Below are positions 3,952-64,000 of a stretch of DNA of 64,000 nucleotides, piece after piece (the stretch's first letter is position 1; every line of letters starts with the position of its first letter). A program made the translations under genes and the position numbers. This DNA is from Lepidodermella squamata. Taxonomy: Eukaryota; Animalia; Gastrotricha. The notes beneath the pieces were generated by a model, which ran no database searches, was not told the DNA's origin, and was given only the letters and a program-made list of their open reading frames with translations. The stretch spans positions 861,869 through 925,868 of the forward strand of contig JBLDXI010000045.1 in the NCBI GenBank assembly GCA_047495785.1, given 5' to 3'.

Positions 3952-6219
3952 TTACTTTTTCAGTGATTTCAGCTGTTCGCGAAGTTGCGGGACCACTATA
4001 GGGCGCCAGTCTCGTTGTCTCGCGATAAATCGTCGAAAATGAGGCGATTGTTGCACCAAAGTCGCAGAGAGGATAGCTCCAGTCATCGAAGCGATTTTCA
4101 TCAATAGCCCATAATCCTTGAAAGTCGATTGATGGACTTTGCTAACTTTTCCCAAAGCGGACGTCACGCCCATAACCTCGCTAAAAAGCTCTTCAATTTC
4201 ATTATTCCCCATTTTAGCTTGAATGAAAACTTCAGTGATAGGAACCATCGCAGGATCGCCAGAAATGATCGAATTTAAGCCCAGCATGAGGTTCATCAAT
4301 TCATATGGTTCCGGCTCCTCGAAAGACATCAAACGCCGTGCGATGAAAGCAGCAAATTGCTTCAGAGGCCCCGCAAATTCCTGCGACCAACGGGCTCGAA
4401 CGTCCTTATCAGCAATTCGCACGAGGGTGGCGAAACAAAACACGCTACTTTTTTCCTTATTGAAGGCAAATCGCACCATATCGCGAGCAACTGCAGTGTC
4501 CTGGAAAATCAGCCGAGCGAATTCGCCATTTCTCGACGACAAAATCATGCTGGCGACAAAATCAGCGACTCGAGCCGTGAAGCCAAGTTGCAGGAGGTAG
4601 TGATGGCCGGCATGCTCAGACGCGTATTTCTCCATGATTTCAGTCGCCCTGGGTAGAAATTTCACCATTCTCGTCGAAAACTCATCACAGTCCGCCAGAT
4701 TTTTCAGCAACGCCAGATTCGGCCGAGCTAAGGCAATCGTCACGACAGTATGTTTCATACTCTGAGAGATATCCGCCTTTCCGTCTTTCATCAATCTCTC
4801 GCCAAACGGCACCGTAAATTCAAGCCTGACCGAGTTGCAAACGTGAAAGGATAGATGATTATTGATTAAATAATCCATAGGTAGAAACAAGTTGCAGAAC
4901 TCATACGGAAGGTGAGTTAAAACTCCGAATAAGTTCAACATCAACCAGTTGAACGTGGTTGGAGATTCATTAAAGCCTGGGTAACTGTTACCCGGGTCTT
5001 GAACCAGGGTTTTATTGGCCCAGTCGCCAAATGACAGCAGATAGGCAAGCATTATTAAATCCAGTGATTTTCCACGTTGTACCAAGGGTGAATTTTCTAT
5101 GCACCGCAGGAAAACTTGGTTGTCGCGAAGTTTTTGCAGGACATCTGAAAAGTGGTACTGCCACTCGGAGGTTCCGACCTTTTGAACGCAAGTGCGAAGA
5201 TCGCCGAACTTCCGGCCGGAGAACACGAACAGAATTATCGCAGACGCGTACCAGCTCAAATCGTCGAACGGTTTGACTAGAACAGCCCGGGCCGGGTCGG
5301 CCGTGATTTGGCTGAAATACGGCAGGGCTAAAATGCCCCAGCCGATGAAAGCATTTTCAATATAGCCAGGTTTAGACGAAGCGAGTCGAATTAAAGCTTG
5401 GCGACTGACGCAACTGTAACCGAATGATTTTAGGAAATTTCTGTACCAAGGCTGGTTGATGACAGACTTGCATACCGGACCGTTTTGAACCCCATCGGCG
5501 ATATAAATCCAGTTGGCAAGCATTTCGGAGAACCAATAGAAAAATCTAAGTTCTGAACTCGTTGAAGTCGCAGGGTTCAGGCGTTCGAAAAACCAGAGAA
5601 GAGCTTTATTTTCGTTCAATTTGCTCAAAAGATGAGACTTCCGTCGAAAAGCTTCTTTATACTCTTTGGTTGTGTCGACAACGTAACGCCGCATGTGGAC
5701 AACGGTGTATAGGTTGAAATCCCAGCTTTTCGAATCGTCAATTGCTACAAAAATTTCGAGGCATTTCTCTAAATCTTGAACTCCGAACTGCCCTACGCCA
5801 AGTTTTGAATAGCCAGCCCTGAAATACGGCACCAGCTCTTCGCCCTCGCCTTCGTTGCTGATCGCGTGAGTCGCTAGGGCTATTGCGGTTAGTTCTTCGT
5901 ACCGTTTCAACTCGAACAACATAGCACAGGCTTCCATGGCGAGTTCAACCGTGTAGTCGCCGTGCATTTCAGCTGCTTCGTTGTAGCACTCGAGAGCGTC
6001 TTCGAAGCGACGCGAATTTTTAGCGAATCGGCCGCGTCTCATAAGTTCGAGGATTTCGCGGTCACGCTGTTTCGCCGCTGCCGGGCCACCGCCGGCTTTT
6101 TCTCGGGTCACCCTGCAGAACTCGGCGACTTTGTAGCGGTCTTTCAGGTCGAGGAAGTGCTGGTAGACATCGACTGACCCCGGCTTGGCATCATCGCCGA
6201 ATATCAGTTCAAAAGCCAT
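3952..6219 (-). CDS. Helical-repeat family ('LIFG-PGS' family) copy 1, 755 aa, intronless
   Basis: MAFELIFGDDAKPGS start, TPR-like GRFAKNSRRFEDALECYNEA, family motifs LRFF, QPWY..FL.SFGYS and KPFDDLSW. AATAAA (minus strand) near 3886. Confidence 0.9.
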   Translation of the reverse strand: MAFELIFGDDAKPGSVDVYQHFLDLKDRYKVAEFCRVTREKAGGGPAAAKQRDREILELMRRGRFAKNSRRFEDALECYNEAAEMHGDYTVELAMEACAMLFELKRYEELTAIALATHAISNEGEGEELVPYFRAGYSKLGVGQFGVQDLEKCLEIFVAIDDSKSWDFNLYTVVHMRRYVVDTTKEYKEAFRRKSHLLSKLNENKALLWFFERLNPATSTSSELRFFYWFSEMLANWIYIADGVQNGPVCKSVINQPWYRNFLKSFGYSCVSRQALIRLASSKPGYIENAFIGWGILALPYFSQITADPARAVLVKPFDDLSWYASAIILFVFSGRKFGDLRTCVQKVGTSEWQYHFSDVLQKLRDNQVFLRCIENSPLVQRGKSLDLIMLAYLLSFGDWANKTLVQDPGNSYPGFNESPTTFNWLMLNLFGVLTHLPYEFCNLFLPMDYLINNHLSFHVCNSVRLEFTVPFGERLMKDGKADISQSMKHTVVTIALARPNLALLKNLADCDEFSTRMVKFLPRATEIMEKYASEHAGHHYLLQLGFTARVADFVASMILSSRNGEFARLIFQDTAVARDMVRFAFNKEKSSVFCFATLVRIADKDVRARWSQEFAGPLKQFAAFIARRLMSFEEPEPYELMNLMLGLNSIISGDPAMVPITEVFIQAKMGNNEIEELFSEVMGVTSALGKVSKVHQSTFKDYGLLMKIASMTGAILSATLVQQSPHFRRFIARQRDWRPIVVPQLREQLKSLKK

Positions 6220-7185
6220 GGAATAAAACTTCTAAATATGATGGCAAAATTATTTGTCGAACTAATGAAACATGTCACATCCAACTATTTCAATTTAATC
6301 AAATCAAAATCACATAAAATCCTGGAATTTTGCAAACTTGGGCTCACTTATATGAGAAAATGAAGAACTCTCACGGGGACCAAACAATCGAGGCTAAATT
6401 TTGGCAGGAAAAGGCATTAGAAATGGATCTTACTTTTAGCGGAAAAATGTCTAGAATTTCAAATAGGCCTAAATCACTCTTCGAACTTTCAAGGATTGAC
6501 TATCATAATTCAAAAAGTGGAAAGTTTCAAAAAATCTACTAAAAATCTGAAATTAAAAAAAGGTTTCTTGAAATTCCTACATGCGCATGGTAAAATTTTG
6601 CCATTAGGAAATTGAATTTCTCTATGGCTGAATTAAATTTTTTAAGGCGGACTTTTTTCAATATTTTTACTTTATTTCCACAGAGGTATGAGCATTTAAC
6701 ACCCCAAAAAAGGCTCCAACGCAGCCAAAACAAATCGAGGGGTTCCAGAGAGGGTTCCTCTAGCCATAGAATATTCCCTTATTCTCCCAATTTTAGCAGC
6801 CATAGGTCATACAGCAGTAGCTGCAAAAATGTGAAAAAGAGGAAAAAGTCGCAACGGGGGAAAGTTTTTCTCCGAAATGAAATGAAAAATCCAAAGTTAT
6901 GAGTTTATACGTGCTTTTGATAAAGACTAGCTAAAGGTACCATGTTTCAAATTTTTTCCGACAAAAGAAGCTTTGACCTGACCAGATTTTATTGCTATCG
7001 ATTGCAACATCGCAACACAGAATGTGAGTAATAAGGAAACAAATCATCACGTGCGTCTCAGCCATTAATAATGGACCATCAAAGCATCGCAATAGAAAAA
7101 GCCCATCACTTCGGTGCAAATGTTGACCCGGTACAGAAACATAATGCAAAATGGTGAATTATACGAGTATGGTATGTAACAGTTT

Positions 7186-9503
7186 TTATTGATAATTTTT
7201 CAGCGCTTTTAGGTGATCGCGTAGTTGTTCAGTAGCTCGCGGCCGCCATTCCGGATTTCGCAAGATGATTCGCCGAAAATGCGGCAACTGTTCCGAAAAG
7301 GCGGCGGCAACCAACGCGCCCGAAATCGACCCGATTCGCATCATCAACTCGTAATCTTTGATATTTTGACGACCAGCCGCTAGTTTAGACACCTTCCCTA
7401 GCGCCGTAGTAGCGCCCATTATCTCGCCGAAAAGTTGGCTCACTTCTTCATTCGTGATTTTCGCCTCGTCAAAAACTTGTTGAATCGGCACGAGGATAGG
7501 ATCCCCAGCAATCAGAGAGTGAAAACTCAACAGCAAATTGACGAGTTCATGCGGGTCAAACTCGCTGAAATGCATCAATCGCCGCATTACGAAGGCCGCG
7601 AATTTTTTCAAGGGACCAGCAAACTTCTTCGACCAGCGAAGTCGCGTTTCAGGGTTAGCACTCCGCAATAAGGCAGCCAGGCAGCGAGGGTTACTCTTCT
7701 CCTTATCAAAGCAAAACTGGGCGAAATCATCGGAAGAAACTGTATCTAGAAAAACGATTCGCGAAAATTCCCCATTTTTCGCTGCTAAAATCATGTGAGC
7801 GATAAAATCGGCGATTTTCGACGAAAATCCGATTTGCAACACGCAATGGTACCCAGAATAGGCCGCAGCGTATTTCGACATTAATTCAACAGCTTTCGGC
7901 AGGTAGCGGACGATTCTCGAAGCGAATTCCTCGCAATTTGCCAATTTTTTGATTAAACCTGGTTCTTCCAAGCAAACTCCGACCTGAATTACGGAATGCA
8001 TAATACTTTGCATTATGTCGGCATTTCCGTCTTTCATCAACCGGTCGCCAAACGGGACGGTGAATTCCATGCGAACTGCGTTGCAAACATGGTACGAGAC
8101 GTGTTGGATCATAAATTCGAACGTGAAGAAAACATCGCGAAATTCGAGGCCGAAATGGCTCATTAATTGGTAAATGTTAAGCATTAACCAATTACTGGTT
8201 GTTGGAACAAGTTCACTACCCGGGAATTTACCAGGGTTCTGAACTAGGAGCTGGTAGCAATAATCGCCGTAAGCTAGCAAGTAGGACAAAAGGATCAAAT
8301 CAAACGCCTGTCCACGCTGTTCATTCGTTAGATTTCCAACACATCGAATGAAAACTTGGCTGAATCGAAGCTGTTTTAAAACCTCCGAAAATTGATACGG
8401 CCACTCGGCTGTTCCAACCTTGTGAGCATTCGGCCGTAAATCGTTGAATTTCCTACCCGCAAAATTTTAATCGAAATCGCCGACGCCAACCAGGCGAAAT
8501 CGTCGAAAGGTTTAGTCAATAGGGCAGTCGAAGGCTCCAGCTTCATTTTGGTAAGGTAAGGAATTGAAAGCAGGAAGAAGCCCATGTAAGCATTTTCAAG
8601 GGCGCCAGGCCTTGACGACGCTAGCCGGGTCAGCGCGTCCTTAGTTACGCAGCTGTAACCGAACGATTTCAGGAAATTTCGATACCATGACTGGCTACAA
8701 ATCGATTTTCCAAACGCGCCGTAGCCCAAGTTATCAGGCCCGTCCATAATATTCATCCAATTAATCACGAGTTCGGCGAAAAATCCAAAAAAACGAAGTT
8801 CAGAAGCTGAGGACGTAGCCATGTCCAGACGTTTAAACAGCGCCATCAGCGCTTTATTCTCAGAAAATTCCGCGGCTAGATGCGATTTCCGCTTCATAAC
8901 TTTCATAGCTTCGTCCTTATTCTGATACAAATGGTGGGTAGTATGGCTGACAAAGAAAAGATTGTAGTCCCAGCCCTTCGAATCGTCGATTTTCACCAGT
9001 GTTTCAAGAGTTCTTTCTAGATCGGCGGCGTTGAGTGTCTTCAAACCTTTCTTTTTAGCCTCGTCTTTGTCGAGTTCGTAACCCATTTCTGAATAGCTCG
9101 CAACAAAATGGTCGATCAAATCGTCACCTTCGCCATTTTTCGACATGCTGTGGATAGCCAGGGCGATGCCAGTTGATTCTTCAAAACGGCCAAGCTCGAA
9201 TAGAACTTCTGAGGCTTCAATGGCGAGTTCAATACTGAAGTCGCCAAGAATGTCAGCGGCTTCGTTGTAGCATTCGAGAGCGTCTGCAAATCGTTTGGAA
9301 TTTTTGGCGAAACGGCCCCGTCTCGTGAGTTCGATGACCTCGCGTTCGCGGTGTTTCACCGCAGAGGGACCGCCGGCTGCTTTTTCGCGAGTTTGTCGGC
9401 AGAATTCGGCGACTTTGTACCGGTCTTTCAGGTCAAGAAAATGCTGGTAGACATCGACTGACCCCGGCTTAGCATCCTCGCCGAAAATCAACTCAAATGC
9501 CAT
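7186..9503 (-). CDS. Family copy 2, closest to copy 1, broken by a 1-nt frameshift at ~8461-8464 (assembly error or young pseudogene)
   Basis: ORFs 8376-9503 and 7186-8298 join if one T is added to the run in aaaattttgcg, restoring IFAGRKFNDLRP...VGTAEW, collinear with copy 1 VFSGRKFGDLRT...VGTSEW. Confidence 0.85.
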
Positions 9504-10633: not shown

Positions 10634-12739
10634 TTATTTCAAACATGCACGGCATTCGGCAACAAGTTTACGGCGTAGAGTCGGCTCAGCTTTGGAAACA
10701 AAGTTAAAAACTGGCGACTTTTCCAGTAAAATCGCTGTGACGATGGTGATACTCATCGTCGCAATTGCCCGCATGCGGCGGGTGAAATGGATATCGAACT
10801 GGGTGCCAGGCTGCGGTTCCCATAATTCACGTACTCCGGACGAGAAAATAAGCAGAGATGTCATTATTTTGAAAGCTTCTTTCTGGCGCAAGTCCAACTT
10901 CCCTAAGGTTGTTGCCCGGCCGTATAGCGCTTGAAATGACAACAGGGCCTGCACGTATTCGTCAGGAGTAACCGAGTAAAACGTAGCCATTTTCCTGCGG
11001 ACTGTTAACGCGAATTTTTCAAGAACCGACGGGTACAGCTTCGACAATCGAGTTAGATCCTCAGCACTAGCAGCTCTCACCATCGCTGTCATGGCCCGGC
11101 TGTTGATTTTCTCGTTGCTGAACAGATAACCCAGGCACAATCGGCCATCGATTGTATCCTGCATCACCATTCGATGAAAAACTGACGATTTACTCGATAG
11201 CGTGAATAGTTCAGCGATGAAACTCAACGTGTACATGTCAATCTTTTTCCGAATATCGCGGTCGTTGTGAATTTGCGTAGATTTGATTGCCGATTCAAAG
11301 CAGCTGGTGAATATTTTGAAGTACCTTGAACAAAATTCCTCACAATCAGCCAATTTCGGAACCATATTATTACGAACGCCGGTTAACTGTAGGTACTCCT
11401 CGCCAACCTCTGTCGTGCCGTGAAGGTTGAAATTTCCAGCCGATTTCACGAGCCGCTCAATGCTGAATAGCCGCGACATAGGCAGAGATGCCAGTTCGTT
11501 AATTACAGGAAAATCTTGGAAACGGCGAGTTAAATAAATCATCGGCCACAGAAAATTTTGATCCGTTATCGGTTTCTCGGCTTTACCCGGGTACTCGCCG
11601 GGTTCGGCCAGGAAGAATTCGTGACCCCACTCGCCACAAGCGACGTGCCGGGCGAGAAGTAACAGGTCGAAAGATTTCGCTAGCTGTTCTTTCGGTAACG
11701 ATTCAACTCGATTCGAGAAAACCGGGTGATTTTCAAGAGCCATAAGACAATCGACGTAGATTTGAACGGTGTTGGCACTAGCCCACGCGTTTTTTCGGAC
11801 ATTCGAAAGTTCGGTTTTGGTGAACAAAAACAAGCTCATCGCTGATAAGAGCCATGAAAAATCGTCGAAAGGTTTCATCACAATTGCTTTTTCTTTGGAA
11901 TTGCGAACACGGCACATCACCGGCCATGCGAGTTGCGTCCAGCCGAAGATGATGTCTTCGAAAAATGCGTCGTTATTAGACTTGACCAGCCGGGTTAAGG
12001 CCTGTTTTGAGACGAGACTGTAACCGAATGAGACGAGAAATTTCGAGTACCAGGGCTGCGATGTTAGAAATTGCAGAGGCCGGGCCTTCTTGGTTTGCTT
12101 CACAATTTCCACCCAAGTACCGATGACAAAAATGAACCAAGAAATGAAGCGAAGTTCAGGTATGGACGAAGTTCCAACATCAGCAGAATTGAGTAATTTC
12201 AATAGGGCAACATTTTCCTGGACCATCGAAATTTTATGCAGATTTTCGACTAAATATTCGACAGTTTTCGGCTCTTTCAGCTGAAGATGGCGGCGAATGT
12301 GCATCACAGCAAATAGGTGATCGTCCCAGGATTTTACGTTTTCGATTTTGAATAGGCGATCCGTTGCCAGGTCGAAGTCAGTCACGTTGAATCGGATCGC
12401 TACCATGTTCTTGTTGGTATAGCCAAGATTTTTGTAGCACTTGTTGTAAAGAGGTAATAACAGTTTCGATCTTTCGGTTTCAATGCTTGATTTTACGACA
12501 GTCCCAGATAAAGCAGCGGCTTCTTCGTATCGACCCGCAGCAATCAGCTCATCAATGTCTTCTACGGTTATTTCTGGGGCTAATTCACAGGTGAGTTCAA
12601 CGGGTAAGTCGAAAACGCAGCGGCGGATCGATTCACGAAGCACCGCGACGCTGGTTCGGTCTTTCACGTCTATGAAGTGTTTGTAAACGTCAGATGAACC
12701 AGGTACAGCATTTTCTCCAAAAATTAATTCGAAAGCCAT
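10634..12739 (-). CDS. Family copy 3, 701 aa
   Basis: MAFELIFGENAVPGS, SQPWYSKFLVSFGYS, KPFDDFSW. tttttag lies directly before the ATG. Confidence 0.9.
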   Translation of the reverse strand: MAFELIFGENAVPGSSDVYKHFIDVKDRTSVAVLRESIRRCVFDLPVELTCELAPEITVEDIDELIAAGRYEEAAALSGTVVKSSIETERSKLLLPLYNKCYKNLGYTNKNMVAIRFNVTDFDLATDRLFKIENVKSWDDHLFAVMHIRRHLQLKEPKTVEYLVENLHKISMVQENVALLKLLNSADVGTSSIPELRFISWFIFVIGTWVEIVKQTKKARPLQFLTSQPWYSKFLVSFGYSLVSKQALTRLVKSNNDAFFEDIIFGWTQLAWPVMCRVRNSKEKAIVMKPFDDFSWLLSAMSLFLFTKTELSNVRKNAWASANTVQIYVDCLMALENHPVFSNRVESLPKEQLAKSFDLLLLARHVACGEWGHEFFLAEPGEYPGKAEKPITDQNFLWPMIYLTRRFQDFPVINELASLPMSRLFSIERLVKSAGNFNLHGTTEVGEEYLQLTGVRNNMVPKLADCEEFCSRYFKIFTSCFESAIKSTQIHNDRDIRKKIDMYTLSFIAELFTLSSKSSVFHRMVMQDTIDGRLCLGYLFSNEKINSRAMTAMVRAASAEDLTRLSKLYPSVLEKFALTVRRKMATFYSVTPDEYVQALLSFQALYGRATTLGKLDLRQKEAFKIMTSLLIFSSGVRELWEPQPGTQFDIHFTRRMRAIATMSITIVTAILLEKSPVFNFVSKAEPTLRRKLVAECRACLK

Positions 12740-14538: not shown

Positions 14539-16296
14539 TCAAGTTTTGAGATATGGAGAAATATGCGCGAAAATGCTAGCCCGCCATTTCACGTCACTTT
14601 CGATGGCTTTACGGAACCGCGGCGATTGCTCACAAAAAACAGCCGCCAGTAGCAAGCACGCAAGTGATCCAGCCATCAACAACTGATAGCATATCGACGG
14701 CTCGCAGGTCATCGCCAATTTGGACAAAGTGCCCATGCCCAGCAACGTATTTAGTACTTCAGCGTATAACTTCTCCACCTCGACCATAGTCAGTTTAGAG
14801 CAGCGGCGTATTTCGCTAAAAGGTACAACAACAGGTTCGATTGACGTCAAAGCATGCAGAGCTAGAAATGAATCGATCAATTCATTCGGATCAGAAATTG
14901 CACAGCCAGAAATCCTGCGAACAATGGCGCAAGCGAAATTTTTCATTTGACTCGAAAATTTAGTCTTTAAATGCGATCGAATTTCAGTGCCGGAATTTCG
15001 TACGAGATCGGCTATGCAGTGGACGTTTATTTGAGAATAATTGCTCAAAATTAACTCGCTCAGGGCTTCGAATTCTCGAAATAAACAACGAGATAATAAA
15101 GAATTCTTCGTGGATAAAACAGCCATTGCAAGAAAATTCATGAAAAATTCAGCAGAATCTCGATCAGCCTCGATAGACCGGCCCGATTGAAATTGAGTAA
15201 ATCGTTGAAATAAAGAATCAGATTCGCCGAAAATGACCGCAATCATTATCAAAGCTTCAATTCGCCATTCAAATGTTGCTAAAGGTTCTCCAGCCGCAAG
15301 AAACAGGAAATGGATAAATGGGCGGCAAATATCGGCCGCGAATTCAGGTTCCATAGTCGCGATACGGATGAATCCTGATTTCGAAGTTAAACTGCGGCCA
15401 AATCGATGCAAATAGTCGAAATACCATGATTGCTGAGTTAGCAGCATTTTCAAGCCACCGATTTCGCGATCATCAAATTGTTCATCATTAGGAGGAAACC
15501 ATGTTAGAATCAATTTAATCAGTTGACTGAGAAAGCGCAGTTCTGAAACCGATGAAGTTACAACATCAGCGGTTTCCAGCAACTTCAACAACAGCCGATT
15601 TTGCGAAATCGAGTTAACCAAGTCGAATAAATTTTTCTTGGCAAATGAATAGACTTCAGTATTCAAATTCGATCTAGCACGAGACAAAATATTGCGGATA
15701 TGAACCAAGTAGAAGAGGTAGTAATCCCAATTCTTGGAGCCATCAATCGAAACCAACTTATCCAGAAATTCCCTTAAATTCGAATGATGAAAATATTTGA
15801 ACTTGGCGAATATTAAAGGATCGTTAGGGTAGAATTTGAAAGCCAAATTGAGGTACCCTTCGGCAGCGAGGCTCGCATTCCTCTGCGTATTCTCGCAAAG
15901 AGGCGTGCTCATTAGTATTGCGACGGCATCTTCGAAGCGACCAAGTTTGATAAGTAACTTGGAAACCGAAACAGAGATTTCTGAGTTGAATCCTCCTGAG
16001 ATTTCTGAAGCTTGATAAAACAATTCGAATGCGATTTCCAATCGATTGGTGTAAAAATCATCCAGCTTAACATTGTCTCCAGCTTCTAGAACGGAGGTCA
16101 TTTCTTTTCGAGCGATTTTAAGGAGTTCAGCCACTTTCCTGCTACGATCACTGATAGCCGCAGTGCCTCCAGCGGCGTGTATGCGGATATTCGTCAGGGA
16201 AATCTCGGGTTTCAAGATATTCAATAGCTTGGCGAAAAATCGGTGGAGGCTATCTGAATCTGTAGCGACGGTTTTTCCATACTCATCAAAAGTCAT
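14539..16296 (-). CDS. Family copy 4, divergent and internally shortened (585 aa)
   Basis: IRIHAAGG, DGSKNWDYYLF, ADVVTSSVSELRFL, QQSWY..YLHRFGRSL and the C-terminal FCEQSPRFRK align to copies 1 and 2. It lacks the PFDD motif and part of the middle. Confidence 0.85.
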   Translation of the reverse strand: MTFDEYGKTVATDSDSLHRFFAKLLNILKPEISLTNIRIHAAGGTAAISDRSRKVAELLKIARKEMTSVLEAGDNVKLDDFYTNRLEIAFELFYQASEISGGFNSEISVSVSKLLIKLGRFEDAVAILMSTPLCENTQRNASLAAEGYLNLAFKFYPNDPLIFAKFKYFHHSNLREFLDKLVSIDGSKNWDYYLFYLVHIRNILSRARSNLNTEVYSFAKKNLFDLVNSISQNRLLLKLLETADVVTSSVSELRFLSQLIKLILTWFPPNDEQFDDREIGGLKMLLTQQSWYFDYLHRFGRSLTSKSGFIRIATMEPEFAADICRPFIHFLFLAAGEPLATFEWRIEALIMIAVIFGESDSLFQRFTQFQSGRSIEADRDSAEFFMNFLAMAVLSTKNSLLSRCLFREFEALSELILSNYSQINVHCIADLVRNSGTEIRSHLKTKFSSQMKNFACAIVRRISGCAISDPNELIDSFLALHALTSIEPVVVPFSEIRRCSKLTMVEVEKLYAEVLNTLLGMGTLSKLAMTCEPSICYQLLMAGSLACLLLAAVFCEQSPRFRKAIESDVKWRASIFAHISPYLKT

Positions 16297-35125: not shown

Positions 35126-35212
35126 TAATAAACCCCTAGAATTGATCGATACATCAAAGTTATTTATCACCAACAAACAGCGAAGGACTACTTAGAAAAT
35201 TGTTATTATTAT

Positions 35213-38445: not shown

Positions 38446-39143
38446 GATTTCTTAAAGATAAATAGCCACCTAGATGATGTCATTATGAAATTTATTTTTA
38501 ATCTTTAAACATGACGTAAAGATCCGCTTCGATAACTCGACGTTTGCTGATGACTTCTTTCAATTCTAGGGGTAAATGATTGTTATTTGCAAAATGAGTA
38601 GAATTGTTTAAAAAGTCCGGGCTGTCTTCTTCAGGATCATCAACACCACCTCGTCGATACTGAACTGCAGAGTCTCCACTCATTCTTCGCCCCATACACG
38701 GTCAACTGATATCAATTATTCAACAAAAGTTACTCATTCAAGGTATTAATCGATGAAATTACCATAGATACGGCTGGACACGAGATCCTCGAATACAAAA
38801 CGTCTGAATGTCACCGTTCGGCCATCTTTCAGGCCTGCCTCAGGCTCATCGCCAACTTCAGTCACTTGTATCTCGTAGAAGTTGGGTCGCCCAACAACCC
38901 CGTCGATTTGTCGACATCGATGCGTAACACTTACTTTTTAGCGTTGTGGATGAAATTTTACCGCTAAATAATTGAGCATAACCTCCGCTTCTAAATTCTT
39001 ATAAAACCGAAACAAAATTTAGTTTATTCCACGCAACCGGATACAAGCAATTGAGCGATTATATATTCAAAATATAGGAGGGTATCAAAATGGGATTAAT
39101 GCACAATTAGAAAACATTGAGATGTCAATTGAATCAGCGTAAT

Positions 39144-52758: not shown

Positions 52759-52832
52759 ATGACAAAAATCAAATCTAAAACACCATTACATAAATTATTA
52801 GCATTTTTTTAATAAAACAATTATGACAATTT

Positions 52833-53958
52833 TCACGCATCAAAGCCCAGACATTTGTAGAATCTAACCATATCTTCGGCGTTCAATCTGTGAACAATTT
52901 CTCTCAAATGAGCATAACGACACAAATCGCTGTCCAAGGGACCATCGACTTTGGAGTGACTGAAAGCTCGAATTCTCAAGTGCTGCTGACGAGCGGCTAG
53001 ACCGGTGAAGAAAGCATCCTCATTTGTCAGGGAGTTATCTGCGTGTCTCAGTCCGTAGGGTATCAACAAATCCAAATTTCCTAATTGAAAGATATACGCC
53101 GTTCCGGAGCAAAATCGCGGAAAATACATGGGTGCGTAGACTTCAAACGGTGTATAATTTTTGTCAAGTTGGTAGCGAATGACCCGAGAATTCGGCCATG
53201 CGCGACAATAGAATGTCTTGTCATCGGCACTGTTCCGCCTCATCAATCGACCAACTGAGTGAGCTACAGCGGGTAAGTTGACAAAAGTATCATCGTCAGC
53301 TTTAACCACGTAGTAGCTGGACGGGTTCACCGCTTGATTTGTCAATTTCAGTTTATGGCGAATCCAGATAAAAGTTTCCAGGCTTTTCAGGGTCAATAAT
53401 CGGTATTCATCGATGACGTTCAAAATTATCACATCGCCGTAAATCGAACTTTCATTCAGCAGTTTTCTGTCAATTTCCGCTTCATCAGATGCTGTCGTAT
53501 TCCGGGCTTTCCCTACGAAGAAGTAAGGTCCAATTACATTAGATCCGATAGTTGCTGAGAGAAATCGACGATTCGCCCAGGTTTGGCGAATGGCATTGCG
53601 GTTGTCGAATCGGTCGCGGCCTGAGATGACAGCGATTATTAGCGGTATTTCCACAGGCCCACTATCGTAGGTGGGATCTTGAATAAAAATACAAGAAATC
53701 GTATAATAATTGAATGCGTAATTCATGCGCTTACTAGTGTAATATGTAGTCAATTGATTCAAGTTGATAAGAATGCATTTGATCGAAATAACCGCGAAAA
53801 TACCTTAAAATAATGAATTATTTCCAGTCAACGAATAGCATTCGGATATATGACTCACTTGCGAATATCAAAACCCCAAAAATTCGAATCGAAAGCGATC
53901 CATTTTTACTTGGCAAATTCACATTTTCGGGGTCATCGATTGGTGCCGTATCAGTCAT
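52833..53958 (-). CDS. Beta-1,3-galactosyltransferase family (GT31) type II membrane protein, 3 exons
   Basis: Motifs RNAIRQTW, FFVG, ESSIYGDVI, DEYRLLTLKS, VKADDDTFVN, FCSGTAY and EDAFFTG. Two ~55-nt phase-1 introns, and an N-terminal TM segment IFGVLIFASIFAVISI. Confidence 0.92.
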
Positions 53959-54545: not shown

Positions 54546-56762
54546 TCAAACATTAACAATCAGTTCAAGTTCTTTGATCAGCAATTTTATCGATTTTGAC
54601 TCGGCTTTGCGTACAAAAGTTTTCAACTTTGGATCAATCGAAACAAGCCAAGCGAGATTAATTGCAACAATCATCAAGACAATATCGATGTCTTTCGAAA
54701 TTTTCTTCTGACGGGTTTTCATTGCGGACTGAAAAATACGCAAAAAGCCTGAAATCAGCTTTGAGCGATCGCTTCCTTCGAAATCAACGCTTTCAATTTT
54801 GACCAATACAGGGCATGCGATAAACAAGGAATGAAACAGTAAGAGATACAGCGCCGTGTTTTGAACACTTGCGATTTCGGAATCGATGCAAATCCGAGAG
54901 ACAACATGCTGTCCGAGCTTTGAAAGCTTGATTGAAAATTTTGCAGCCAGTCGATCGCGGCAATCAAAACTCGTCAATGTGCGAAATACAGCGGTGACAC
55001 AACCCAGCGAGAAATGTGATGGAACCTTCTTGAACTCACACAAAAATTTGACTGCAGGATCGAATTTCTCTTTATTCATTAATCGAGCGAAAAATGAGTC
55101 TTTGAACAAAGGCGCAGAAAGCAGAAAGTCCACAACGGCAAAGATGAATTTGTGATAGCCTGGAATTAGCGAAGAAATTTCGTGACTCATCACAGCGTCA
55201 ACGCGACTTAACAGCGAGCCAACAAATCGCTTGCAAAATTCTTTGTTATTCACAGCGCGGGATGAATCTGGCTTTTCAGCTTTGAAAGAAATCAGTTCCA
55301 AGTTGCGAATCGACACAGCAAGCTCCGGCTGGCCAGAATCAGACGTCAGATTATCCAAGTGCCGACAGCAAAATTCGATTTTCAGCGCGTAAAAAACGTA
55401 AATCGAAGACATTCGCATGATTTCAGTTTGGACAGGAGTAGCTTTGAAATTCATGAAAACAGCGGCTAAAATGTTTGAAACAGCGCAGGTCAAAATCTGG
55501 GTTGTGATATAGTGAGGAACGTAAGAGTCTTCGTTCTTGTTGCTCAAGAACTGGCACTGCCATTCAGCAAAAGCGGTCATTCCAAGCAAGCACAATCGAT
55601 CAATCGATTCAATAACCTCTTTCGACGACAATTTGTTCGCTGATTTTACAAATTGCGTGTAATCAGGACGGTGCGGATTACCCTGTCCCATGGTCATCAA
55701 GAATGCGGAGATTTCAGTAGCTCCACTTGGGCTGCAGTGGGTAAGAGGATTGAATGGGCCACCGCTGAACAGCAGAAGGAGGGCCACTTTCGTGCACCAC
55801 GCAAAATCGTTGAAAGGCGGCATGTGATCGACTCGGATTTTGCAAGCTTTGAAAAGCATTGCGATTTGAAGCCAACCGTGAATAGCATCGTCAAAAGCTC
55901 CGATCGGGGCAATTGCCAGTCTCTTGATCGCCTCCGGTTTGGCGAGACTCAAGCCGAAGTTTGTAACAAATTTTCTGGCCCATGGCAGCTCGGGAATCAA
56001 AGAATGCAAATCCAGCGCTATGCAATACATGAAAATCATTTTGGTGAATTGGCCGAGGAAACGAAGCTGGTTCAAATTCATGTTAACAAAATCAGCTTTA
56101 TCCAACAAATCACTCAAAAACGGACTCTTGGCTATCCCAGTGACGAGCTTAATTCCTTCATTTCTCGCCTGGTTACGAAATTTCGCTAAATATTTTGTAG
56201 CCCGCAATAGGTAGAAGAACGCTTCCATCCAATCAAATGGCTCGACAAGGTTCAGAATTGGATCAATCGGAGATGACATATCCATCGAGCCGCCAATTTC
56301 GAAGGGTAAGACGAACTCGACTGGGAAGTGGCCGTGCCTTACGTAGAAGTCTCCAAGTCGCAGGCCGGGTCTGCCACAACGGGGGTCCATAGGGCCGTAA
56401 CACGACAGTCGAAGAGAGTACAGGCCAACAACCTGTCGAAATTTCCCTTTTTCAAGCAGGCGATCTGCGATGTTAGTGAACGCGAAAAAATCCCATTCTC
56501 CATCAATTTCAGCAATTTTATGCATGTAATTCATATAGCCGTCATAGTCACCCTCGATCGAAGCATCACCAGCTTTCATTTCCAATTCAAAAGTGGCATC
56601 ATGCCTTGCATCAATTGCCTCCTGGCCGCCAGCCACTGTCTCCCGCAGTTCTTCGCGGAATAGAGCAACGGCTTCGCGGTTCTTCAAACAAACCAGCACA
56701 TTGCTAACTGAATCTGATCCTGGTTCAACATCTTTACCGAATAAAAGCTGGTTAAAATCCAT
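54546..56762 (-). CDS. Family copy 13 (subfamily D), 738 aa
   Basis: MDFNQLLFGKDVEPGS, PPFNDFAW. atttag lies directly before the ATG. Confidence 0.9.
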   Translation of the reverse strand: MDFNQLLFGKDVEPGSDSVSNVLVCLKNREAVALFREELRETVAGGQEAIDARHDATFELEMKAGDASIEGDYDGYMNYMHKIAEIDGEWDFFAFTNIADRLLEKGKFRQVVGLYSLRLSCYGPMDPRCGRPGLRLGDFYVRHGHFPVEFVLPFEIGGSMDMSSPIDPILNLVEPFDWMEAFFYLLRATKYLAKFRNQARNEGIKLVTGIAKSPFLSDLLDKADFVNMNLNQLRFLGQFTKMIFMYCIALDLHSLIPELPWARKFVTNFGLSLAKPEAIKRLAIAPIGAFDDAIHGWLQIAMLFKACKIRVDHMPPFNDFAWCTKVALLLLFSGGPFNPLTHCSPSGATEISAFLMTMGQGNPHRPDYTQFVKSANKLSSKEVIESIDRLCLLGMTAFAEWQCQFLSNKNEDSYVPHYITTQILTCAVSNILAAVFMNFKATPVQTEIMRMSSIYVFYALKIEFCCRHLDNLTSDSGQPELAVSIRNLELISFKAEKPDSSRAVNNKEFCKRFVGSLLSRVDAVMSHEISSLIPGYHKFIFAVVDFLLSAPLFKDSFFARLMNKEKFDPAVKFLCEFKKVPSHFSLGCVTAVFRTLTSFDCRDRLAAKFSIKLSKLGQHVVSRICIDSEIASVQNTALYLLLFHSLFIACPVLVKIESVDFEGSDRSKLISGFLRIFQSAMKTRQKKISKDIDIVLMIVAINLAWLVSIDPKLKTFVRKAESKSIKLLIKELELIVNV

Positions 56763-56926: not shown

Positions 56927-59137
56927 TTAATTGATGACCCTTTGAAACTCGCGAATGCAAACGGCCATCATGTTTTGATCTTCAGTTTTGAGAGTTTTGA
57001 AAAGTAAGTAATCATTCGAAATAAGTTCGGCAAGAATAATTGCTATTGCCATCAAAATGAGATTGCAAGCGTTATCCCCGCCAGCGCTAATGCGATCGAC
57101 GAGCTTCAGCAAATATCGGCAAAATTTCACTCGATGAGAAGAATACGGGAAAACCTGCTCAGTTGATACCAGCCACGGCTTAGTAACGAATAACGAGCGT
57201 AAACACAACAAAAAGGAACAAATTTGCTCAACATCAGCGGTATCAGAATTTTTCTTCAAATTCCAAGCGAGGCTCTGGGCAAATTTTGAAAATTGCTGCC
57301 CATATTTTGCAGCTAATCTAGTTCGATTTTCTGCACGTTCCAGCCTCTGAAAAGTAGCAGCCAAACAAATTGAAGGTTGCATCTTGCTGTTGTTCTCGAA
57401 AGCACATAGAAATTCAATTGCTGGATCGAATCGCTCACTCTGCATCAGTTCTGCGAAGTATGAGCTGTTGAAGCAAGGCGTCGAAAACAAATTAAACAGG
57501 AAATCGAACAGCTGCTTCGGGCCGAAAGCGAACAACAGAGCTGGATGTTTTGATACGGCTTCAATATTACGAATCACAGAGTCGAAAAATCGATCGCAAA
57601 AATCTCGATTGTTCACGACAGAAGATGCACCGGGGTTTTTGGCGTCTTGAAAAATGACACCAAGGTTTCGAACGCAAACTGCCAACGCAGGCCGGCCGAA
57701 ATCAGAGTTGAGTTTATCCAAATTTTGGCAGCAAAATTCGAGTTTCAAAGCGTAGAATACGAATATTGACGGGATCTGCCATAACACTTTTTGTTTCGGG
57801 GTTCCCATCAAATTCCAGTGGATAAAATTGAAAAGATTCGAGACATCAGAATTCAGATCACGAAGCGTGTTGACTCGTTTTGAAGCAGCCTCTTCGGCCG
57901 GCTCTATGAACTCATTTTTCCATTCAGCAAACGCAATCATGCCAAGTAAGCAGAGGCGATCGATTGTAGCCGCCATTTCCTGATCGGAAAATTCTTCGAA
58001 ATTGCGGGAAAAATCGTTCGAATAAGGCAGCCGCGAGAACTTATCGGCAAGTTTGATCACAATACTTGCGCAGTCAAGCATTTCTTTCTTTCGAGATTTT
58101 ACGGCCACAACGTCCAATGGGTTTTTGCCAAACAGGAAAAGTAACGCGACTTTTGAATACCAAGACATATCATTGAACGGGGGTGTTGTATCAAGTCGAA
58201 TTCCGCAATTCGAAAATAGAATAACGAAATCCATCCACCCGCAAATGATGTCATCGAAAGCATCGAGTGGGGCATGGGCGAGTCGCTTCATCGAATTTGG
58301 TTTAGCTAGACTAGAGCCGAAGGTGGTCAGAAACGATTTAGCCCAAGGCTGCTCGCATAAAAGCGGCCGTAACTCGAATTTTTTCGCCCATTCAATGACG
58401 CAACGAGTGAATCGTCCAATGAAATAAAGCTGAAGGATATCCATCTCAGCAAAGTCAGCTTTACCAAGTAAATCACTCAAATATTGGTTATTTGACACCG
58501 TTTTAATGAATCTTCTTGCTTCAGATGCAGCCTCATGATAGCCATGATAAAGCCAGACTCCTAGTTTGTTCAAATAAAACAACCCTTCAAGCAATGAGGT
58601 AGCTCTATCCAGGTTCAAAACCGCGTCAATGTGCGACGATTTATTGCTGAGAACCAAATCCATGTCGCATCGTTTGATTGATGTCAGAAACGGCATGAAG
58701 CGGTTTAAGGTTGAAAACGCTTCAACCTGGTGTTGCGGACCCATTTTCAGCAGGTCGTTTGTTTCATCTCTACCATATCCAATAATTCTCAGGTAGTAAA
58801 TGCCCTGGGCGTGTTTGCCTTCCCCGGCACCCATGAAAAGGTCAAAAGTTGTGTCGAACAAACGGCGATCAAAACCGCCCGAAACTTGGACGGCTTGGAA
58901 CATTTTATTTAAAGCCAGATCGTATTCTTGTTTGATTGCGGCGTCAGCCGATTCTCTGACCAGCTTTTTGACGGTTTCCTCCCTGGCTGCAATTGATTCA
59001 GGTCCACCTGCTGCTCTTTCGCGAACTTCACGGCGGAAATTGTCGACATCCCCCCGGGTTTTCAATCGAATCAACAATCTTCCGACTTTATCAGAGCCAG
59101 GATCAATATCATCTTTAAAAATGAGATGATAATCCAT
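56927..59137 (-). CDS. Family copy 14 (subfamily D), ~736 aa
   Basis: MDYHLIFKDDIDPGS at 59137, EQPWAKSFLTTFGSSL, PPFNDMSW. Confidence 0.9.
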   Translation of the reverse strand: MDYHLIFKDDIDPGSDKVGRLLIRLKTRGDVDNFRREVRERAAGGPESIAAREETVKKLVRESADAAIKQEYDLALNKMFQAVQVSGGFDRRLFDTTFDLFMGAGEGKHAQGIYYLRIIGYGRDETNDLLKMGPQHQVEAFSTLNRFMPFLTSIKRCDMDLVLSNKSSHIDAVLNLDRATSLLEGLFYLNKLGVWLYHGYHEAASEARRFIKTVSNNQYLSDLLGKADFAEMDILQLYFIGRFTRCVIEWAKKFELRPLLCEQPWAKSFLTTFGSSLAKPNSMKRLAHAPLDAFDDIICGWMDFVILFSNCGIRLDTTPPFNDMSWYSKVALLFLFGKNPLDVVAVKSRKKEMLDCASIVIKLADKFSRLPYSNDFSRNFEEFSDQEMAATIDRLCLLGMIAFAEWKNEFIEPAEEAASKRVNTLRDLNSDVSNLFNFIHWNLMGTPKQKVLWQIPSIFVFYALKLEFCCQNLDKLNSDFGRPALAVCVRNLGVIFQDAKNPGASSVVNNRDFCDRFFDSVIRNIEAVSKHPALLFAFGPKQLFDFLFNLFSTPCFNSSYFAELMQSERFDPAIEFLCAFENNSKMQPSICLAATFQRLERAENRTRLAAKYGQQFSKFAQSLAWNLKKNSDTADVEQICSFLLCLRSLFVTKPWLVSTEQVFPYSSHRVKFCRYLLKLVDRISAGGDNACNLILMAIAIILAELISNDYLLFKTLKTEDQNMMAVCIREFQRVIN

Positions 59138-60217: not shown

Positions 60218-63200
60218 TTACGCTAGAAAGACAGTTTCACTTTCTTTGATTGCATTTTTCAGCTGAGCCAGGATGACTGAGCGATGAATTTCACGATCGG
60301 AAATGTAGATCTTGCGACAGCGCTTGTCGTTTTTAGAAAGACCAGCAAGAATGATACCAGATAACATCACAACCAAATAGTACATTTTAAACAGATAGAG
60401 CTGCTGTCCTCGTAGTTTTTGACGGCGAAACGCTGGTTTCATGTCATTAATTTTTTCGGAAATCGTTCGGATTGACACGGCAAGTGCGTACATCATTGCA
60501 ATCATTCGCCGGGGCTTCACCGCTTCGTCGAGATCAGCCAGAAATGGCGATGAACCGAAAATGGCGACAAGCATTGCCATGTAATTTTGGAAATCAGGGA
60601 GGGTAGCTTCAGATGTTGCGACACAAGTGCATTCGATGAATTCGTTAACAGCTCGACCAGCCACATTTTGGAGTTGAGATTTGTACTTTGCGAGAACTTG
60701 ATGACGATAGCTTTCAGTCCCAGCAGCGATGCATCTCAGGTAATTAGCGACACATTCATGGGAAACAAAGTCGAACTGATTTTTCGGGTTCAGAACAACG
60801 CTTAGAAATACGTCACTGATTTCAGGCCGGCGGAAGTAATCGGCAAATGATGAGCGGTAGCTTTTAACGGCTAGAAAGTCTGAAACAACGTTGATGACAT
60901 CAGCGTAAGGACCATTGCCATCACACAGCGCAAATGCACATGGATCGCTGAACCTGATTCCAGGTAATTTTGGCAGCAATATGGCATAGGTTTTGAACAG
61001 TCGTTCGGAATATTCTGGGCAATTCACAAGATCAGCCAGTAATGAATAATCTTTGAGGTGCAAGCGGCTGTTGACAACGTTGAGAATGCTCTCTAAAAAT
61101 ACATGAATACAGTATTTATCGAAAAGAATACATTTTCGTGCATTTAAAACTACTTACTTGAATTAAATTAAAAATTGAGAATTTTTGGAAATTTCAAAAT
61201 TTTTAATTTTCAATTAATCAACAGTACACTTTAATTCCGATATCCAAGGACTAACACTGACTCGCTCAACGCTGACTTTGAACATGGGCAGAAATATAAA
61301 TCCTAGGGTTTAAGCCATGTATTTCTTCATTTCCTGATTTTTAAGATGAGAACTCAATGCAAAGCCAATTCATGTTTCAAATGCTGATTCCAAGTTACTT
61401 TATACACGCAGTCATCGCCCGAACGTTTGTTGCTATGGCAAATGGAAACGTTGACCCGTCAATTTCCACATTTCGCTCTGCTGAGCAATTCACCCTCGTT
61501 CTGCAATATGAGCACGCCATCGACATATAAGACCACTGGTCAAGCCCGTCGACCTAAAACCAAGCTGCGACACTAGATTCACCGATGTATACGATTTCGA
61601 ATCGCCCGTCGGACCTGAGACGGAGGTAAACGTCAATCTCACTGGCCGAGTTCTTCAATTCACGCATAAAGGCATAGTTACAACGACTCAGGGCGACCAC
61701 AACCGCGACATTGCTGGAGCTGTTTTAACAGTCGTTAATTCAGTGAACGTTATGCCAAGTTAGTAATGATAATTATTTATTTTTAGATATTTTCAAGTCG
61801 CGAGGTTCACGAGGTTCAAGAGATCTAATTCTAATAGAGATCTAATAATCAAGCTGCGCTTGAAGTATGTAACCACCGGACGATTCCTCGCCATCGGCTG
61901 TGTTATCACGGAGGCGGCTGCCTATATTTCTGCCACTGTCACATGCATTGTGTCCCAACAAGATTATAGCTTACCTGCGATCTCTGCTACTCTGGCTACC
62001 TCATCCTTTTCGGTTAGGCTAACAATAATCGTGATCACATTACCATACCGCTCCAATTCAGCGGCTTAAATTTTACTGGTTTGCGAATCTCAATGAAAGT
62101 GAACCGCTGGTTCATCTAGTGACATTCTCAAGTTTCGGTATGTAGTACCTTTGCACATGTTCGAATGTGACACTTATTTCGCCAAAAAAGTGACATCGAC
62201 TATAGTAAAATATCGCGTAAAATAACGTAGGCCGAACCCAGGCCAGGACGGACTTGACAATACCAATGTATACGAGTATAACCACGGCCTTCATTCGTTA
62301 GCCGTTTGTAAAAACCCCAATGTGAGGACTGAGGAAATTCTGGAATCGCTGTATTCTAAGCTGGATTCTTCAAACCCAGGCGCTGAACTGTCCGTTACAC
62401 ATCTTGCTACCGGAACGGTAGGCGCGGAACTCAATGATAAGCCGATCGCTGCAGTGACGCCGATAAATATACTTGAAAGGAAATTAGTTTCCCCTTACTT
62501 TTACTTTCCTCATACAGATACCAGATGACCATCCACAGGACAACTTTCTTCTTCGCTGTAAGACATTACGTTTCACCTTGACAGTGATTCGCCAGACATA
62601 ATCAGCAGGAAAGTGTTTCGCCATTCAAAATCTCTATATGCCTCCCGTTAATGATGTTAACTTCTGAGAATTGAGAAGCCTCTTGAAGTACCTCTTTAAA
62701 CCCTACGTTGCACAGATAAAATTCCATAACGTGCGCATTTACCTGTCATTGAAAGCTACACCGCATGATTTGTTACAATTTAGAATTTACTGAGCAAGAC
62801 CCAATAATATTTACCAATCTGTATTATAACACGTTACATCGGTTAAGCAAGGTATTCGCGCGATAATACTTTGCTGCTCTTTTCATGCACTTGAACTTTT
62901 TGCTGCTATTTTTAGCTCAATAAGAGTATAGATAGCCCTCTAAATCTCTAATTAAATTTTTTTTTAATTCTTACGAAATAAGTCGAAGTCGATCGATTTC
63001 ACTCGGGACATATTTTCAACAAGATATTCGAGTCTGAAGGTCCAGTGCAAAGCAGACGTCAGATGAGCTGTAGCGTGTCCTTTGATGAAAATGTCATCGA
63101 ACATGGTCAGCGACGGCAGGATTGCATTCATGACTCTCATTAGCTCTTTCGTGGTGACAGTCGGTTCAACGGGCAAACCAATCGCCGGTGGTCTATTGAT

Positions 63201-64000
63201 TAGCTCCGATTTCCATTCGGCAAAATTAATCTGAGCAAGCGTGAACAGAAGATCGAGAACTTTGCGACACTCGACCCTTGACAAATTGCTCATGCTTTTG
63301 AAAATCATCGGATGCTCTTCGTCGATAATTCGAGTCAAGCGTTGAATAAATGTCGCCGATATGTCGGGCTGATCCTTATCGCAGATTGTTTTACGATCGA
63401 CGCTGTAGCGTTCACCCATGAAAATCGACAGCCAGCTCATCGAAACGAAGAATTTCACGTCATCGTACGGCGGAACAACTGGCAGTTTTTGGTGAACAGA
63501 ATCGATTGGCATTACCATCAAATGCATGCAAGTAAAGAAGAGCAGACTTTCGAAATTAAACGTGATCAATGAGTAGTCGTATTGAGCCAATCGAATCAGC
63601 GATTCTTTCGTGATAACGGTCTTCGCAAAATTCGATATCAGGACCTGGAACCATTTTTTACGCACTAAATCAGGCTCACCCACCAAGGTGTTCAATATCC
63701 GAATTAAACAGGTCATAAACCTCAACTTGGCCGGTTCATCCGTGCCGAAGTTGACCGACGTGAACAGATCAGAAACAGCTTGAGAGTTGGCAAAGCGCGA
63801 TACAATGCGATCAACATTATCTTCGAGATACTCGCGGTTTTGATCCTTTTTAATTTCGAATTGATATAAAATGTGGGTTGCGGGGAACACATTTTCCTCC
63901 CACGGCGTGCTTGTCTTGAACGATAACAGCTTATCAAACGATTTCGCGAGGTCTTGAGCAGTGAAAGAACAGGTCGGGAAAAGCTCTTCGTAACCTTTTT
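60218..64000 (-). CDS. Family copy 15, divergent, 5' end beyond the window; exons >64000-62975 and 61092-60218, split by an 1882-nt intron
   Basis: Motifs LRFM, KKWFQVLISNFAKT, PPYDDVKF, NFAEWK, VNCPEYSERL. Donor C|GTAAG at 62974 and acceptor TTTTTAG|AG at 61093 join in frame (CAG). Confidence 0.8.

What the first reader, a model, noticed from the sequence alone, without database searches (positions are those of the whole stretch)
3952..64000. Tandem array of an unrecognised, fast-diverging helical-repeat family interleaved with SOCS-box adaptors: candidate intracellular surveillance/ubiquitin system
Seen in the sequence: 15 copies plus one relic of a ~600-760 aa family. They share the N-terminal signature (LIFG-x4-PGS...R..AAGG), a TPR-like segment and spaced core motifs (LRF, PW..F..FG.SL, P[FY][DN]DxxW, F[AG][DE]W). 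They fall into at least four very divergent subfamilies, yet nearly all frames are intact, and four SOCS-box genes sit among them. No signal peptide or catalytic motif is evident. Established: SOCS boxes recruit Elongin B/C-Cul5 ligases, and clustered birth-and-death expansion with gene conversion is typical of host-defence families (for example nematode F-box and pals genes). Inference: this is a lineage-specific set of cytosolic solenoid recognition proteins co-expressed with E3 substrate adaptors.
Basis: partly seen in the sequence, partly recalled or inferred. Interest (0 to 1): 0.85.

Follow-up and report, generated by a model that had tools for sequence, protein, structure and literature searches.

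The report
Orphan TPR-armadillo array with SOCS-box neighbours
A tiny animal (probably a gastrotrich) carries a same-strand row of 15 very dissimilar but conserved copies of an undescribed protein-binding gene, mixed with four ubiquitin-ligase adaptor genes; the family is real, but nothing here shows that the two work together or act in immunity.

Summary
The array is real. It holds 15 loci of one family (median 21% identity): 13 intact single-exon copies, one with a frameshift, and one whose 'relic' is probably its second exon. Four Pfam-confirmed SOCS-box genes and five unrelated genes lie among them. AlphaFold (pLDDT 85) gives a three-repeat TPR head and a long armadillo-type body. Only four outside relatives exist among 1.84 billion proteins, all environmental. 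The most distant keeps an HSP70/90-type clamp and resembles TTC12 by language-model features. The window copies have lost the clamp. Evolution is mainly purifying (omega 0.27-0.33), with one proven mosaic tract and only marginal signs of positive selection. The SOCS genes did not co-duplicate with the family and are absent beside its relatives in two other animals (short flanks). One family copy and two SOCS genes are transcribed. Best reading: an old, lineage-restricted radiation of chaperone-independent binding scaffolds sharing a gene row with another expanded family. A joint surveillance/ubiquitin system is not shown (about 12%). The scan has already noted this family on at least six other pieces of this genome, twice mixed with SOCS genes.

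The parts
3952..6219 (-). A1, family copy, 755 aa; modelled: N-terminal cap about 1-45, three-TPR head 47-144, armadillo-type body about 145-755
7186..9503 (-). A2, closest paralog of A1 (52-55%); one frame break near 8465 in a short A/T run (true lesion or assembly error, not tested)
10634..12739 (-). A3, 701 aa; lacks the first part of the TPR head
14539..16296 (-). A4, 585 aa; degenerate N-terminal signature, about 170-aa in-frame deletion in the body
17114..19348 (-). A5, 744 aa; young clade A5/A6/A9 (62-67% identity)
19966..22008 (-). S1, SOCS-box gene, predicted two exons (intron 20772-21398, phase 1), about 471 aa; paralog of S3 (51-52%)
22399..24666 (-). A6, 755 aa; first about 120 codons (TPR head) mosaic with A9
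24956..27142 (-). A7, 728 aa
27661..29826 (-). A8, 721 aa
30907..33159 (-). A9, 750 aa; covered by contigs of RNA-like run X2
33938..35125 (-). S2, single-exon SOCS-box gene, 395 aa; covered by X2; starts 88 nt after the stop of S2n
35213..36565 (-). S2n, single-exon SOCS-box gene, 450 aa; covered by X2; allelic changes mostly synonymous (12 vs 3 listed codons)
36911..38980 (-). unrelated orphan multi-exon gene (approximate limits), no Pfam or PDB match
39144..40569 (-). S3, SOCS-box gene, predicted two exons (intron 39944-39995, phase 1), about 457 aa
41704..41775 (+). tRNA-His(GTG)
44207..46300 (-). A10, 697 aa; paralog of A11 (58%), shared 83-nt identical run
47536..49497 (-). A11, 653 aa; lacks most of the TPR head
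50563..52758 (-). A12, 731 aa; starts 75 nt after the stop of the galactosyltransferase gene
52833..53726 (-). unrelated beta-1,3-galactosyltransferase-family gene (PF01762, E 5.5e-25)
54546..56762 (-). A13, 738 aa; starts 165 nt after the stop of A14
56927..59137 (-). A14, 736 aa
59640..60020 (-). unrelated small SANTA-domain gene (PF09133, E 4.1e-9)
60218..64000 (-).

Best explanation
The array is an old, lineage-restricted radiation of soluble protein-binding scaffolds with a three-TPR head and an armadillo-type body (fold shown by prediction). The family probably descends from a clamp-type TPR-ARM co-chaperone of the TTC12/UNC-45 kind (inferred through one environmental bridge protein). 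The window copies have lost the carboxylate clamp, so they should not dock the EEVD tail of HSP70/90 (residues shown, consequence inferred). Each paralog most likely binds its own protein client along the ARM groove, as a chaperone-independent assembly, sequestering or trafficking adaptor (inferred). Copies arose by tandem duplication, diverged under mostly purifying selection, sometimes exchanged segments and sometimes lost parts (shown). The SOCS-box genes are Elongin BC-Cul5-type substrate receptors of a separate expanded family. They share a co-oriented, probably trans-spliced gene row with the family and with unrelated genes, as neighbours rather than partners (inferred).
For: Model pLDDT 84.6, pTM 0.84, all helical. 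Residues 47-144 match co-chaperone TPRs (Tah1 Z 13.1, rmsd 2.2; PP5; CHIP; HOP). The body aligns with beta-catenin, KAP3 and p115 over 400-450 residues (Z 10.5-11.8, rmsd 7-12). P0005 is homologous over A1 residues 5-389 (hhalign E 4e-12). It matches HOP and RPAP3 TPRs, keeps R/N/N/K at four of five clamp positions, and its six nearest Atlas clusters are TTC12 (0.94-0.96, 205-215 of 256 features). No window copy keeps both clamp asparagines. Omega is 0.27 (A5/A6/A9) and 0.33 (A10/A11); M1a vs M2a p=0.18 and 0.14. The other-species copy P0001 falls inside the paralog tree, with weak support. S1's paralog is S3 (dS saturated), not S2, while A5/A6/A9 have dS 0.8-1.2, so no SOCS+family unit was duplicated. 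No SOCS gene lies beside P0001 or P0005. An acceptor-like TTYAG lies within 35 nt of the ATG in 15 of 20 genes of every kind, against 10% background.
Against: No client, localisation or phenotype is known. The TTC12 link rests on a language-model score with recognition below the tool's threshold; no sequence search returned TTC12, and the C-terminal half of P0005 matches the family only at p about 0.05. The ARM-body Z-scores are in the range common to helical repeats. M8a vs M8 is marginally significant (p 0.02-0.03), so a few per cent of sites may be positively selected. Unchecked notes report the SOCS/TPR-ARM mix on two other pieces of the genome.
Confidence: 0.5

Rival explanations
1. One reading: the TPR-ARM proteins are cytosolic sensors that recognise foreign or damaged proteins and pass them to the co-clustered SOCS-box adaptors for Cul5 ubiquitination.
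For: All four SOCS genes lie within 21 kb around the young A5/A6/A9 clade, on the same strand. A9, S2 and S2n appear in the same RNA-like run. Mosaicism affects the TPR head. Unchecked notes report the mix on two other pieces.
Against: No co-duplication. No SOCS gene beside outside relatives. Five unrelated genes are interleaved in the same way. The SOCS proteins carry their own 300-400-aa putative substrate-binding bodies. No conserved BC-box or degron-like motif in the family. No RNA contig bridges A9 and S2 (zero depth 33164-33754). Notes list several arrays of either family alone.
Confidence: 0.12
2. The family is a stand-alone host-defence repertoire (pals-like): divergent binders of pathogen or selfish-element proteins, independent of the SOCS genes.
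For: High copy number, lineage restriction, deep divergence, deletions and mosaicism. About 20-35% of sites are near neutral and a small omega>1 class is not excluded. Listed A9 allelic changes are 4 non-synonymous to 3 synonymous, against 3 to 12 in S2n (tiny, incomplete sample).
Against: Overall omega 0.27-0.33 and a non-significant M2a. No effector or signalling domain. Expressed in a whole-animal library with no known challenge. Lineages look old.
Confidence: 0.2
3. The copies are specialised descendants of TTC12 that still act in cytoplasmic pre-assembly of axonemal dyneins or other ciliary complexes in a heavily ciliated animal.
For: TTC12-like features of the bridge protein, similar length and TPR+ARM layout. 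TTC12 loss reduces dynein arms in Paramecium and humans (PMC8836003).
Against: Clamp lost in all window copies. For a window copy the Atlas gave plant ARM_7 and UNC-45 clusters at 0.85-0.87, not TTC12. Dozens of copies exceed any obvious number of dynein clients (inference).
Confidence: 0.13
4. Mostly functionless duplicates drifting in a duplication-prone region.
For: One frame break and three large deletions.
Against: 13 ORFs of about 2.2 kb stay open at 21% median identity; omega is well under 1; a confident fold; expression.
Confidence: 0.05

Closest known systems
TTC12 (dynein-arm assembly factor, three TPRs; PMC8836003, PMC9406135)
   Same: About 700-750 aa, N-terminal extension, three-TPR head, armadillo-type body (TTC12's ARM region from my own knowledge); nearest Atlas clusters for the bridge protein P0005.
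   Different: No sequence-level match from the family profile; clamp lost in window copies; many copies instead of one; function untested.
UNC-45 myosin co-chaperones
   Same: TPR head followed by ARM-type domains; best Foldseek row (6qdl, E 1.2e-3) and Atlas rows at 0.85.
   Different: TM-score 0.12; about 200 aa shorter; no UNC45-central Pfam hit; no clamp.
Plant TPR + ARM_7 (PF26524) proteins
   Same: Top Atlas rows for A1 (0.87, 185-187 features); same two-part layout.
   Different: Below the 0.9 threshold; no ARM_7 Pfam hit; probably architecture only.
ASB (ankyrin repeat and SOCS box) substrate receptors of Cul5-Elongin BC ligases
   Same: C-terminal SOCS box with BC-box and LPxP-like Cul5 box; weakest PDB hit ASB8, in the SOCS box only.
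   Different: No ankyrin Pfam hit in any exon; single-sequence model unusable; bodies are orphan.
C. elegans pals genes and the intracellular pathogen response with CUL-6 (PMC6347328; bioRxiv 10.1101/145235)
   Same: Species-restricted, clustered, expanded genes of unknown biochemistry in the company of cullin-ligase components.
   Different: No homology; the pals link rests on infection-induced expression and genetics, neither available here; different cullin.

Membership tests
TTC12 orthologues | three-TPR head followed by ARM-type body in about 700 aa | tested here: met
   model and fold searches
TTC12 orthologues | significant full-length sequence or profile match to TTC12 | tested here: not met
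   profile against 1.84 billion proteins gave 4 unnamed hits only; blank; only an Atlas feature score for P0005
TTC12 orthologues | reciprocal best hit or tree placement with real TTC12 sequences | not testable with these tools
TTC12 orthologues | role in dynein-arm assembly | not testable with these tools
   needs knock-down
Clamp-type (HSP70/90-binding) TPR co-chaperones | K-N-N-K-R carboxylate clamp in the TPR groove | tested here: not met
   no window copy keeps both asparagines; P0005 keeps four of five positions
UNC-45/UCS proteins | UNC45-central and UCS domains | tested here: not met
   no Pfam hit; Foldseek TM 0.12
SOCS-box substrate receptors (S1, S2, S2n, S3) | C-terminal SOCS box above Pfam cut-off, with BC-box and Cul5-box-like motif | tested here: met
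   29-36 bits against cut-off 23.5; motifs
SOCS-box substrate receptors (S1, S2, S2n, S3) | binding to Elongin BC and Cul5 | not testable with these tools
   no multimer or bench test
ASB proteins | ankyrin repeats before the SOCS box | tested here: inconclusive
   no Pfam ankyrin hit; LLxxGA-like words by eye; model pLDDT 35
Arms-race host-defence multigene family | clustered birth-and-death expansion with mosaicism | tested here: met
   (max-chi permutation p 0.005)
Arms-race host-defence multigene family | site-level positive selection | tested here: inconclusive
   M2a p 0.14-0.18; M8a vs M8 p 0.02-0.03 with 2-3 sequences and recombination
Arms-race host-defence multigene family | induction by or protection against infection | not testable with these tools
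   only one RNA-like run, as contigs
Two-component TPR-ARM + SOCS system | co-duplication or conserved linkage of the two gene types | tested here: not met
   S1 pairs with S3, not S2; dS ages differ; no SOCS gene beside P0001 or P0005, though flanks are short

The most novel reading that the evidence does not exclude
A TTC12-like co-chaperone lost its HSP clamp and was expanded into a repertoire of cytosolic recognition proteins, co-transcribed in operon-like rows with SOCS-box adaptors that ubiquitinate what they capture. That would be a new intracellular surveillance system in a phylum whose immunity is unstudied.
Probability: 0.12. Interest if true: 0.8.

Novelty: new variant of a known kind. 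Interest (0 to 1): 0.4.

Why it matters
I found no description of this family in databases or papers. It is one of the larger orphan expansions in this genome: 15 loci here and, by unchecked notes, dozens more. If the TTC12-like origin holds, it shows a normally single-copy co-chaperone architecture turned into a multi-copy, clamp-less binding repertoire. That would be a clear case of scaffold repurposing and a starting point for gastrotrich cell biology. The stronger claim, a sensor-plus-ligase defence system, would matter much more, but the evidence here does not favour it.

Tried and rejected
Blank or uninformative: the search for homologous proteins with the family alignment, with P0005 whole and with its TPR region (limited by word index and length window). 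Pfam on all copies gave only sub-threshold TPR hits. PDB sequence search gave only designer PPR/TPR hits at the head. Foldseek on PDB, viral and Atlas libraries gave nothing at E<=1e-3 or TM>=0.5, so a viral origin has no support. The single-sequence model of S2n was unusable and was not searched. The primary TTC12 paper is not held. Rejected: the 'relic' as a 16th locus; variants at 32856-33028 as alleles of A9 (they match A6 at 98.5%); a death/CARD-fold reading of the orphan gene at 36.9-39.0 kb (no hit); BC-box-like words in family proteins (scattered, not conserved). Spliced models (S1, S3, A15) were searched exon by exon by reference; the joined models were not searched or folded, and their frames were checked by arithmetic only. 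The A2 frame break was not checked against reads, because the one read-laying run went to 30800-36700.
Full report
Setting. The window is 43% GC and gene-dense, with every protein gene from 3.9 to 64 kb on the minus strand. Spliceosomal introns, a SANTA-domain gene, a galactosyltransferase and SOCS boxes mark it as animal. The organism is probably the gastrotrich Lepidodermella squamata. This is inference: the scan lists about 1990 windows on 147 pieces, the published assembly has 122 Mb, 157 contigs and 43% GC (PMC11660948), and the runs holding the DNA date from 2024, 2015 and 2014.

Observation. BLASTP, alignment and a six-frame profile scan confirm one family. Thirteen copies are single open frames of 585-755 aa. 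A2 has one frame break near 8465. The two right-edge pieces cover consecutive parts of the profile and are bounded by a GTAAGA donor at 62974 and a TTTTAG acceptor at 61093 that join in frame, so there are probably 15 loci and no separate relic. A3 and A11 lack part of the TPR head and A4 lacks about 170 aa. Identity is 16-68%, median 21%, in at least six lineages. Four SOCS-box genes pass Pfam's cut-off; S1 and S3 each have one phase-1 intron at the same place. A galactosyltransferase, a SANTA gene, a beta-rich ORF, an orphan multi-exon gene and a tRNA-His are also interleaved. Spliced models were searched exon by exon; the joined step was left out.

Protein anatomy. AlphaFold with the 13-copy alignment gives pLDDT 84.6 and pTM 0.84, all helical. 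Residues 47-144 superpose on three-repeat co-chaperone TPRs (Tah1 Z 13.1, rmsd 2.2; PP5, CHIP, HOP). Residues about 105-755 align with beta-catenin, KAP3 and p115 over 400-450 residues at Z 10.5-11.8 and rmsd 7-12. That indicates an armadillo-type solenoid but names no family. Foldseek's best PDB row is UNC-45 at E 1.2e-3, TM 0.12; viral and Atlas structure searches give nothing specific. There is no signal peptide or membrane helix. The best-conserved parts are the first 50 residues and residues 200-300.

Relatives. A profile search of 1.84 billion proteins finds four, all unnamed and from environmental assemblies. One contig carries a GT-AG intron in the gene. P0001 (766 aa, E 2e-74) sits inside the paralog tree on a long branch with open support, which suggests but does not prove that the radiation is older than this species. 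P0005 (751 aa) is homologous over A1 residues 5-389 (E 4e-12); its C-terminal half is inconclusive. P0005 has a canonical clamp-type TPR (HOP E 3e-10, RPAP3 E 2e-9), and its six nearest Atlas clusters are TTC12 (0.94-0.96), although recognition was below the tool's threshold. A1 itself returns plant ARM_7 and UNC-45 at 0.85-0.87. In the alignment of heads, P0005 keeps four of five clamp positions while no window copy keeps both asparagines. I read this as descent from a TTC12/UNC-45-type co-chaperone followed by loss of HSP70/90 docking. The descent is a lead; the residue loss is shown. Earlier notes call the head 'chaperone-docking-type'; for these copies that holds for the fold but not for the docking residues.

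Evolution. Pairwise dN/dS is 0.16-0.32 wherever dS is measurable. Codon models give omega 0.27 for A5/A6/A9 and 0.33 for A10/A11, with 23-36% of sites near neutral. M1a vs M2a is not significant (p 0.18, 0.14); M8a vs M8 is marginal (p 0.03, 0.02), with two or three sequences and recombination present. The first 120 codons of A6 and A9 are significantly closer than the rest (max-chi permutation p 0.005), and A10/A11 share an 83-nt identical run. So conversion is real, purifying selection dominates, and a small positively selected class is neither shown nor excluded. The low identities reflect age and relaxed surface constraint more than a current arms race.

Expression and layout. Run X2, guessed to be RNA, covers A9, S2 and S2n and is empty over the 33164-33754 spacer and upstream of S2n. 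It therefore behaves as RNA and shows expression, but not co-regulation. The genome run shows a second, clearly divergent haplotype; of the listed differences, S2n has 12 synonymous and 3 non-synonymous codons and A9 has 3 and 4 (131 differences were not shown). Fifteen of 20 genes have an acceptor-like TTYAG within 35 nt of the ATG, against 10% of intergenic windows, and three gaps are only 75-165 nt. This fits leader trans-splicing and operon-like rows, and it applies to all gene types alike.

Are the SOCS genes partners? If a SOCS+family unit had duplicated, S1 (upstream of A5) should pair with S2 (upstream of A9). Instead S1 pairs with S3, with saturated dS, while A5/A6/A9 have dS 0.8-1.2; S1 and S2 align only in the SOCS box. 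The loci of P0001 and P0005 show single copies with unrelated neighbours and no SOCS gene, though flanks are short and only two animals are sampled. Unchecked notes list arrays of each family alone and two other mixed arrays. One of these (s1-387742) has the same ASH and SANTA neighbours and may be the other haplotype or a duplicated segment rather than independent evidence. From established knowledge, SOCS boxes recruit Elongin BC and Cul5, and these proteins carry their own large N-terminal bodies, so they need no separate sensor. Whether those bodies are degenerate ankyrin arrays I could not confirm.

Verdict. The best-supported reading (0.5) is an old, lineage-restricted family of clamp-less TPR-ARM binding scaffolds that shares a gene row with a second expanded family. 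Rivals: stand-alone defence repertoire 0.2, ciliary assembly role 0.13, joint surveillance/ubiquitin system 0.12, drift 0.05. It works like a TPR-ARM adaptor, but it is not shown to be a member of TTC12 or UNC-45, and it fails the clamp test. The pals comparison (PMC6347328) is an analogy without homology or induction data. Novelty: new variant of a known kind. Interest 0.4.

Noticed in passing
window:30800-36700: The genome run shows a second haplotype (depth about 40 against 60) differing by several per cent in coding and more in spacer DNA, with indels; high heterozygosity, as might be expected in a parthenogenetic animal.
   Followed up: partly
window:36911-38980 (-): Orphan multi-exon gene with short introns inside the array; no Pfam or PDB match.
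   Followed up: partly
window:37600-37960: Nested inverted repeats and a TTAA-rich tract inside an intron of the orphan gene; looks like a small non-autonomous DNA element.
   Followed up: no
window:59640-60020 (-): Very short (about 126 aa) stand-alone SANTA-domain ORF; this domain normally sits in long Mis18BP1/KNL-2 proteins (own knowledge).
   Followed up: partly
window:42186-43451 (-): Beta-rich ORF resembling ASH/PapD-like repeats; only about 750 nt are free upstream, so the gene is short. No Pfam or PDB hit.
   Followed up: partly
window:52833-53726 (-): Intronless beta-1,3-galactosyltransferase-family gene ending 75 nt before the start of A12.
   Followed up: partly
window:61093-62974 (-): The only intron seen in any family copy here (1.9 kb); may be a recent insertion.
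   Followed up: partly
window:24-686 (-): Exon of an alpha/beta-hydrolase-like gene (HGGG motif; arylacetamide-deacetylase-like by recollection); no Pfam hit for this piece.
   Followed up: no
window:1533-2210 (-): ORF with a 27-nt tandem repeat (1797-1901) giving W-rich repeats; already noted by the scan as a Ly6-like gene (s1-430998).
   Followed up: no
L002:10001-12243: The P0005 gene is split into two ORFs (P0003, P0006) in one sample and whole in another (L003); it lies beside a cluster of aldo-keto reductase genes and a TPR gene.
   Followed up: partly
L005:94-375: P0004 is a stop-riddled fragment with two N-terminal signature pieces; probably a pseudogene in another animal, called with a non-standard code.
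   Followed up: partly
whole window: Acceptor-like TTYAG just before the ATG in 15 of 20 genes, and gaps of 75-165 nt: signature of leader trans-splicing and operon-like transcription. A paper search found no report for gastrotrichs.
   Followed up: partly
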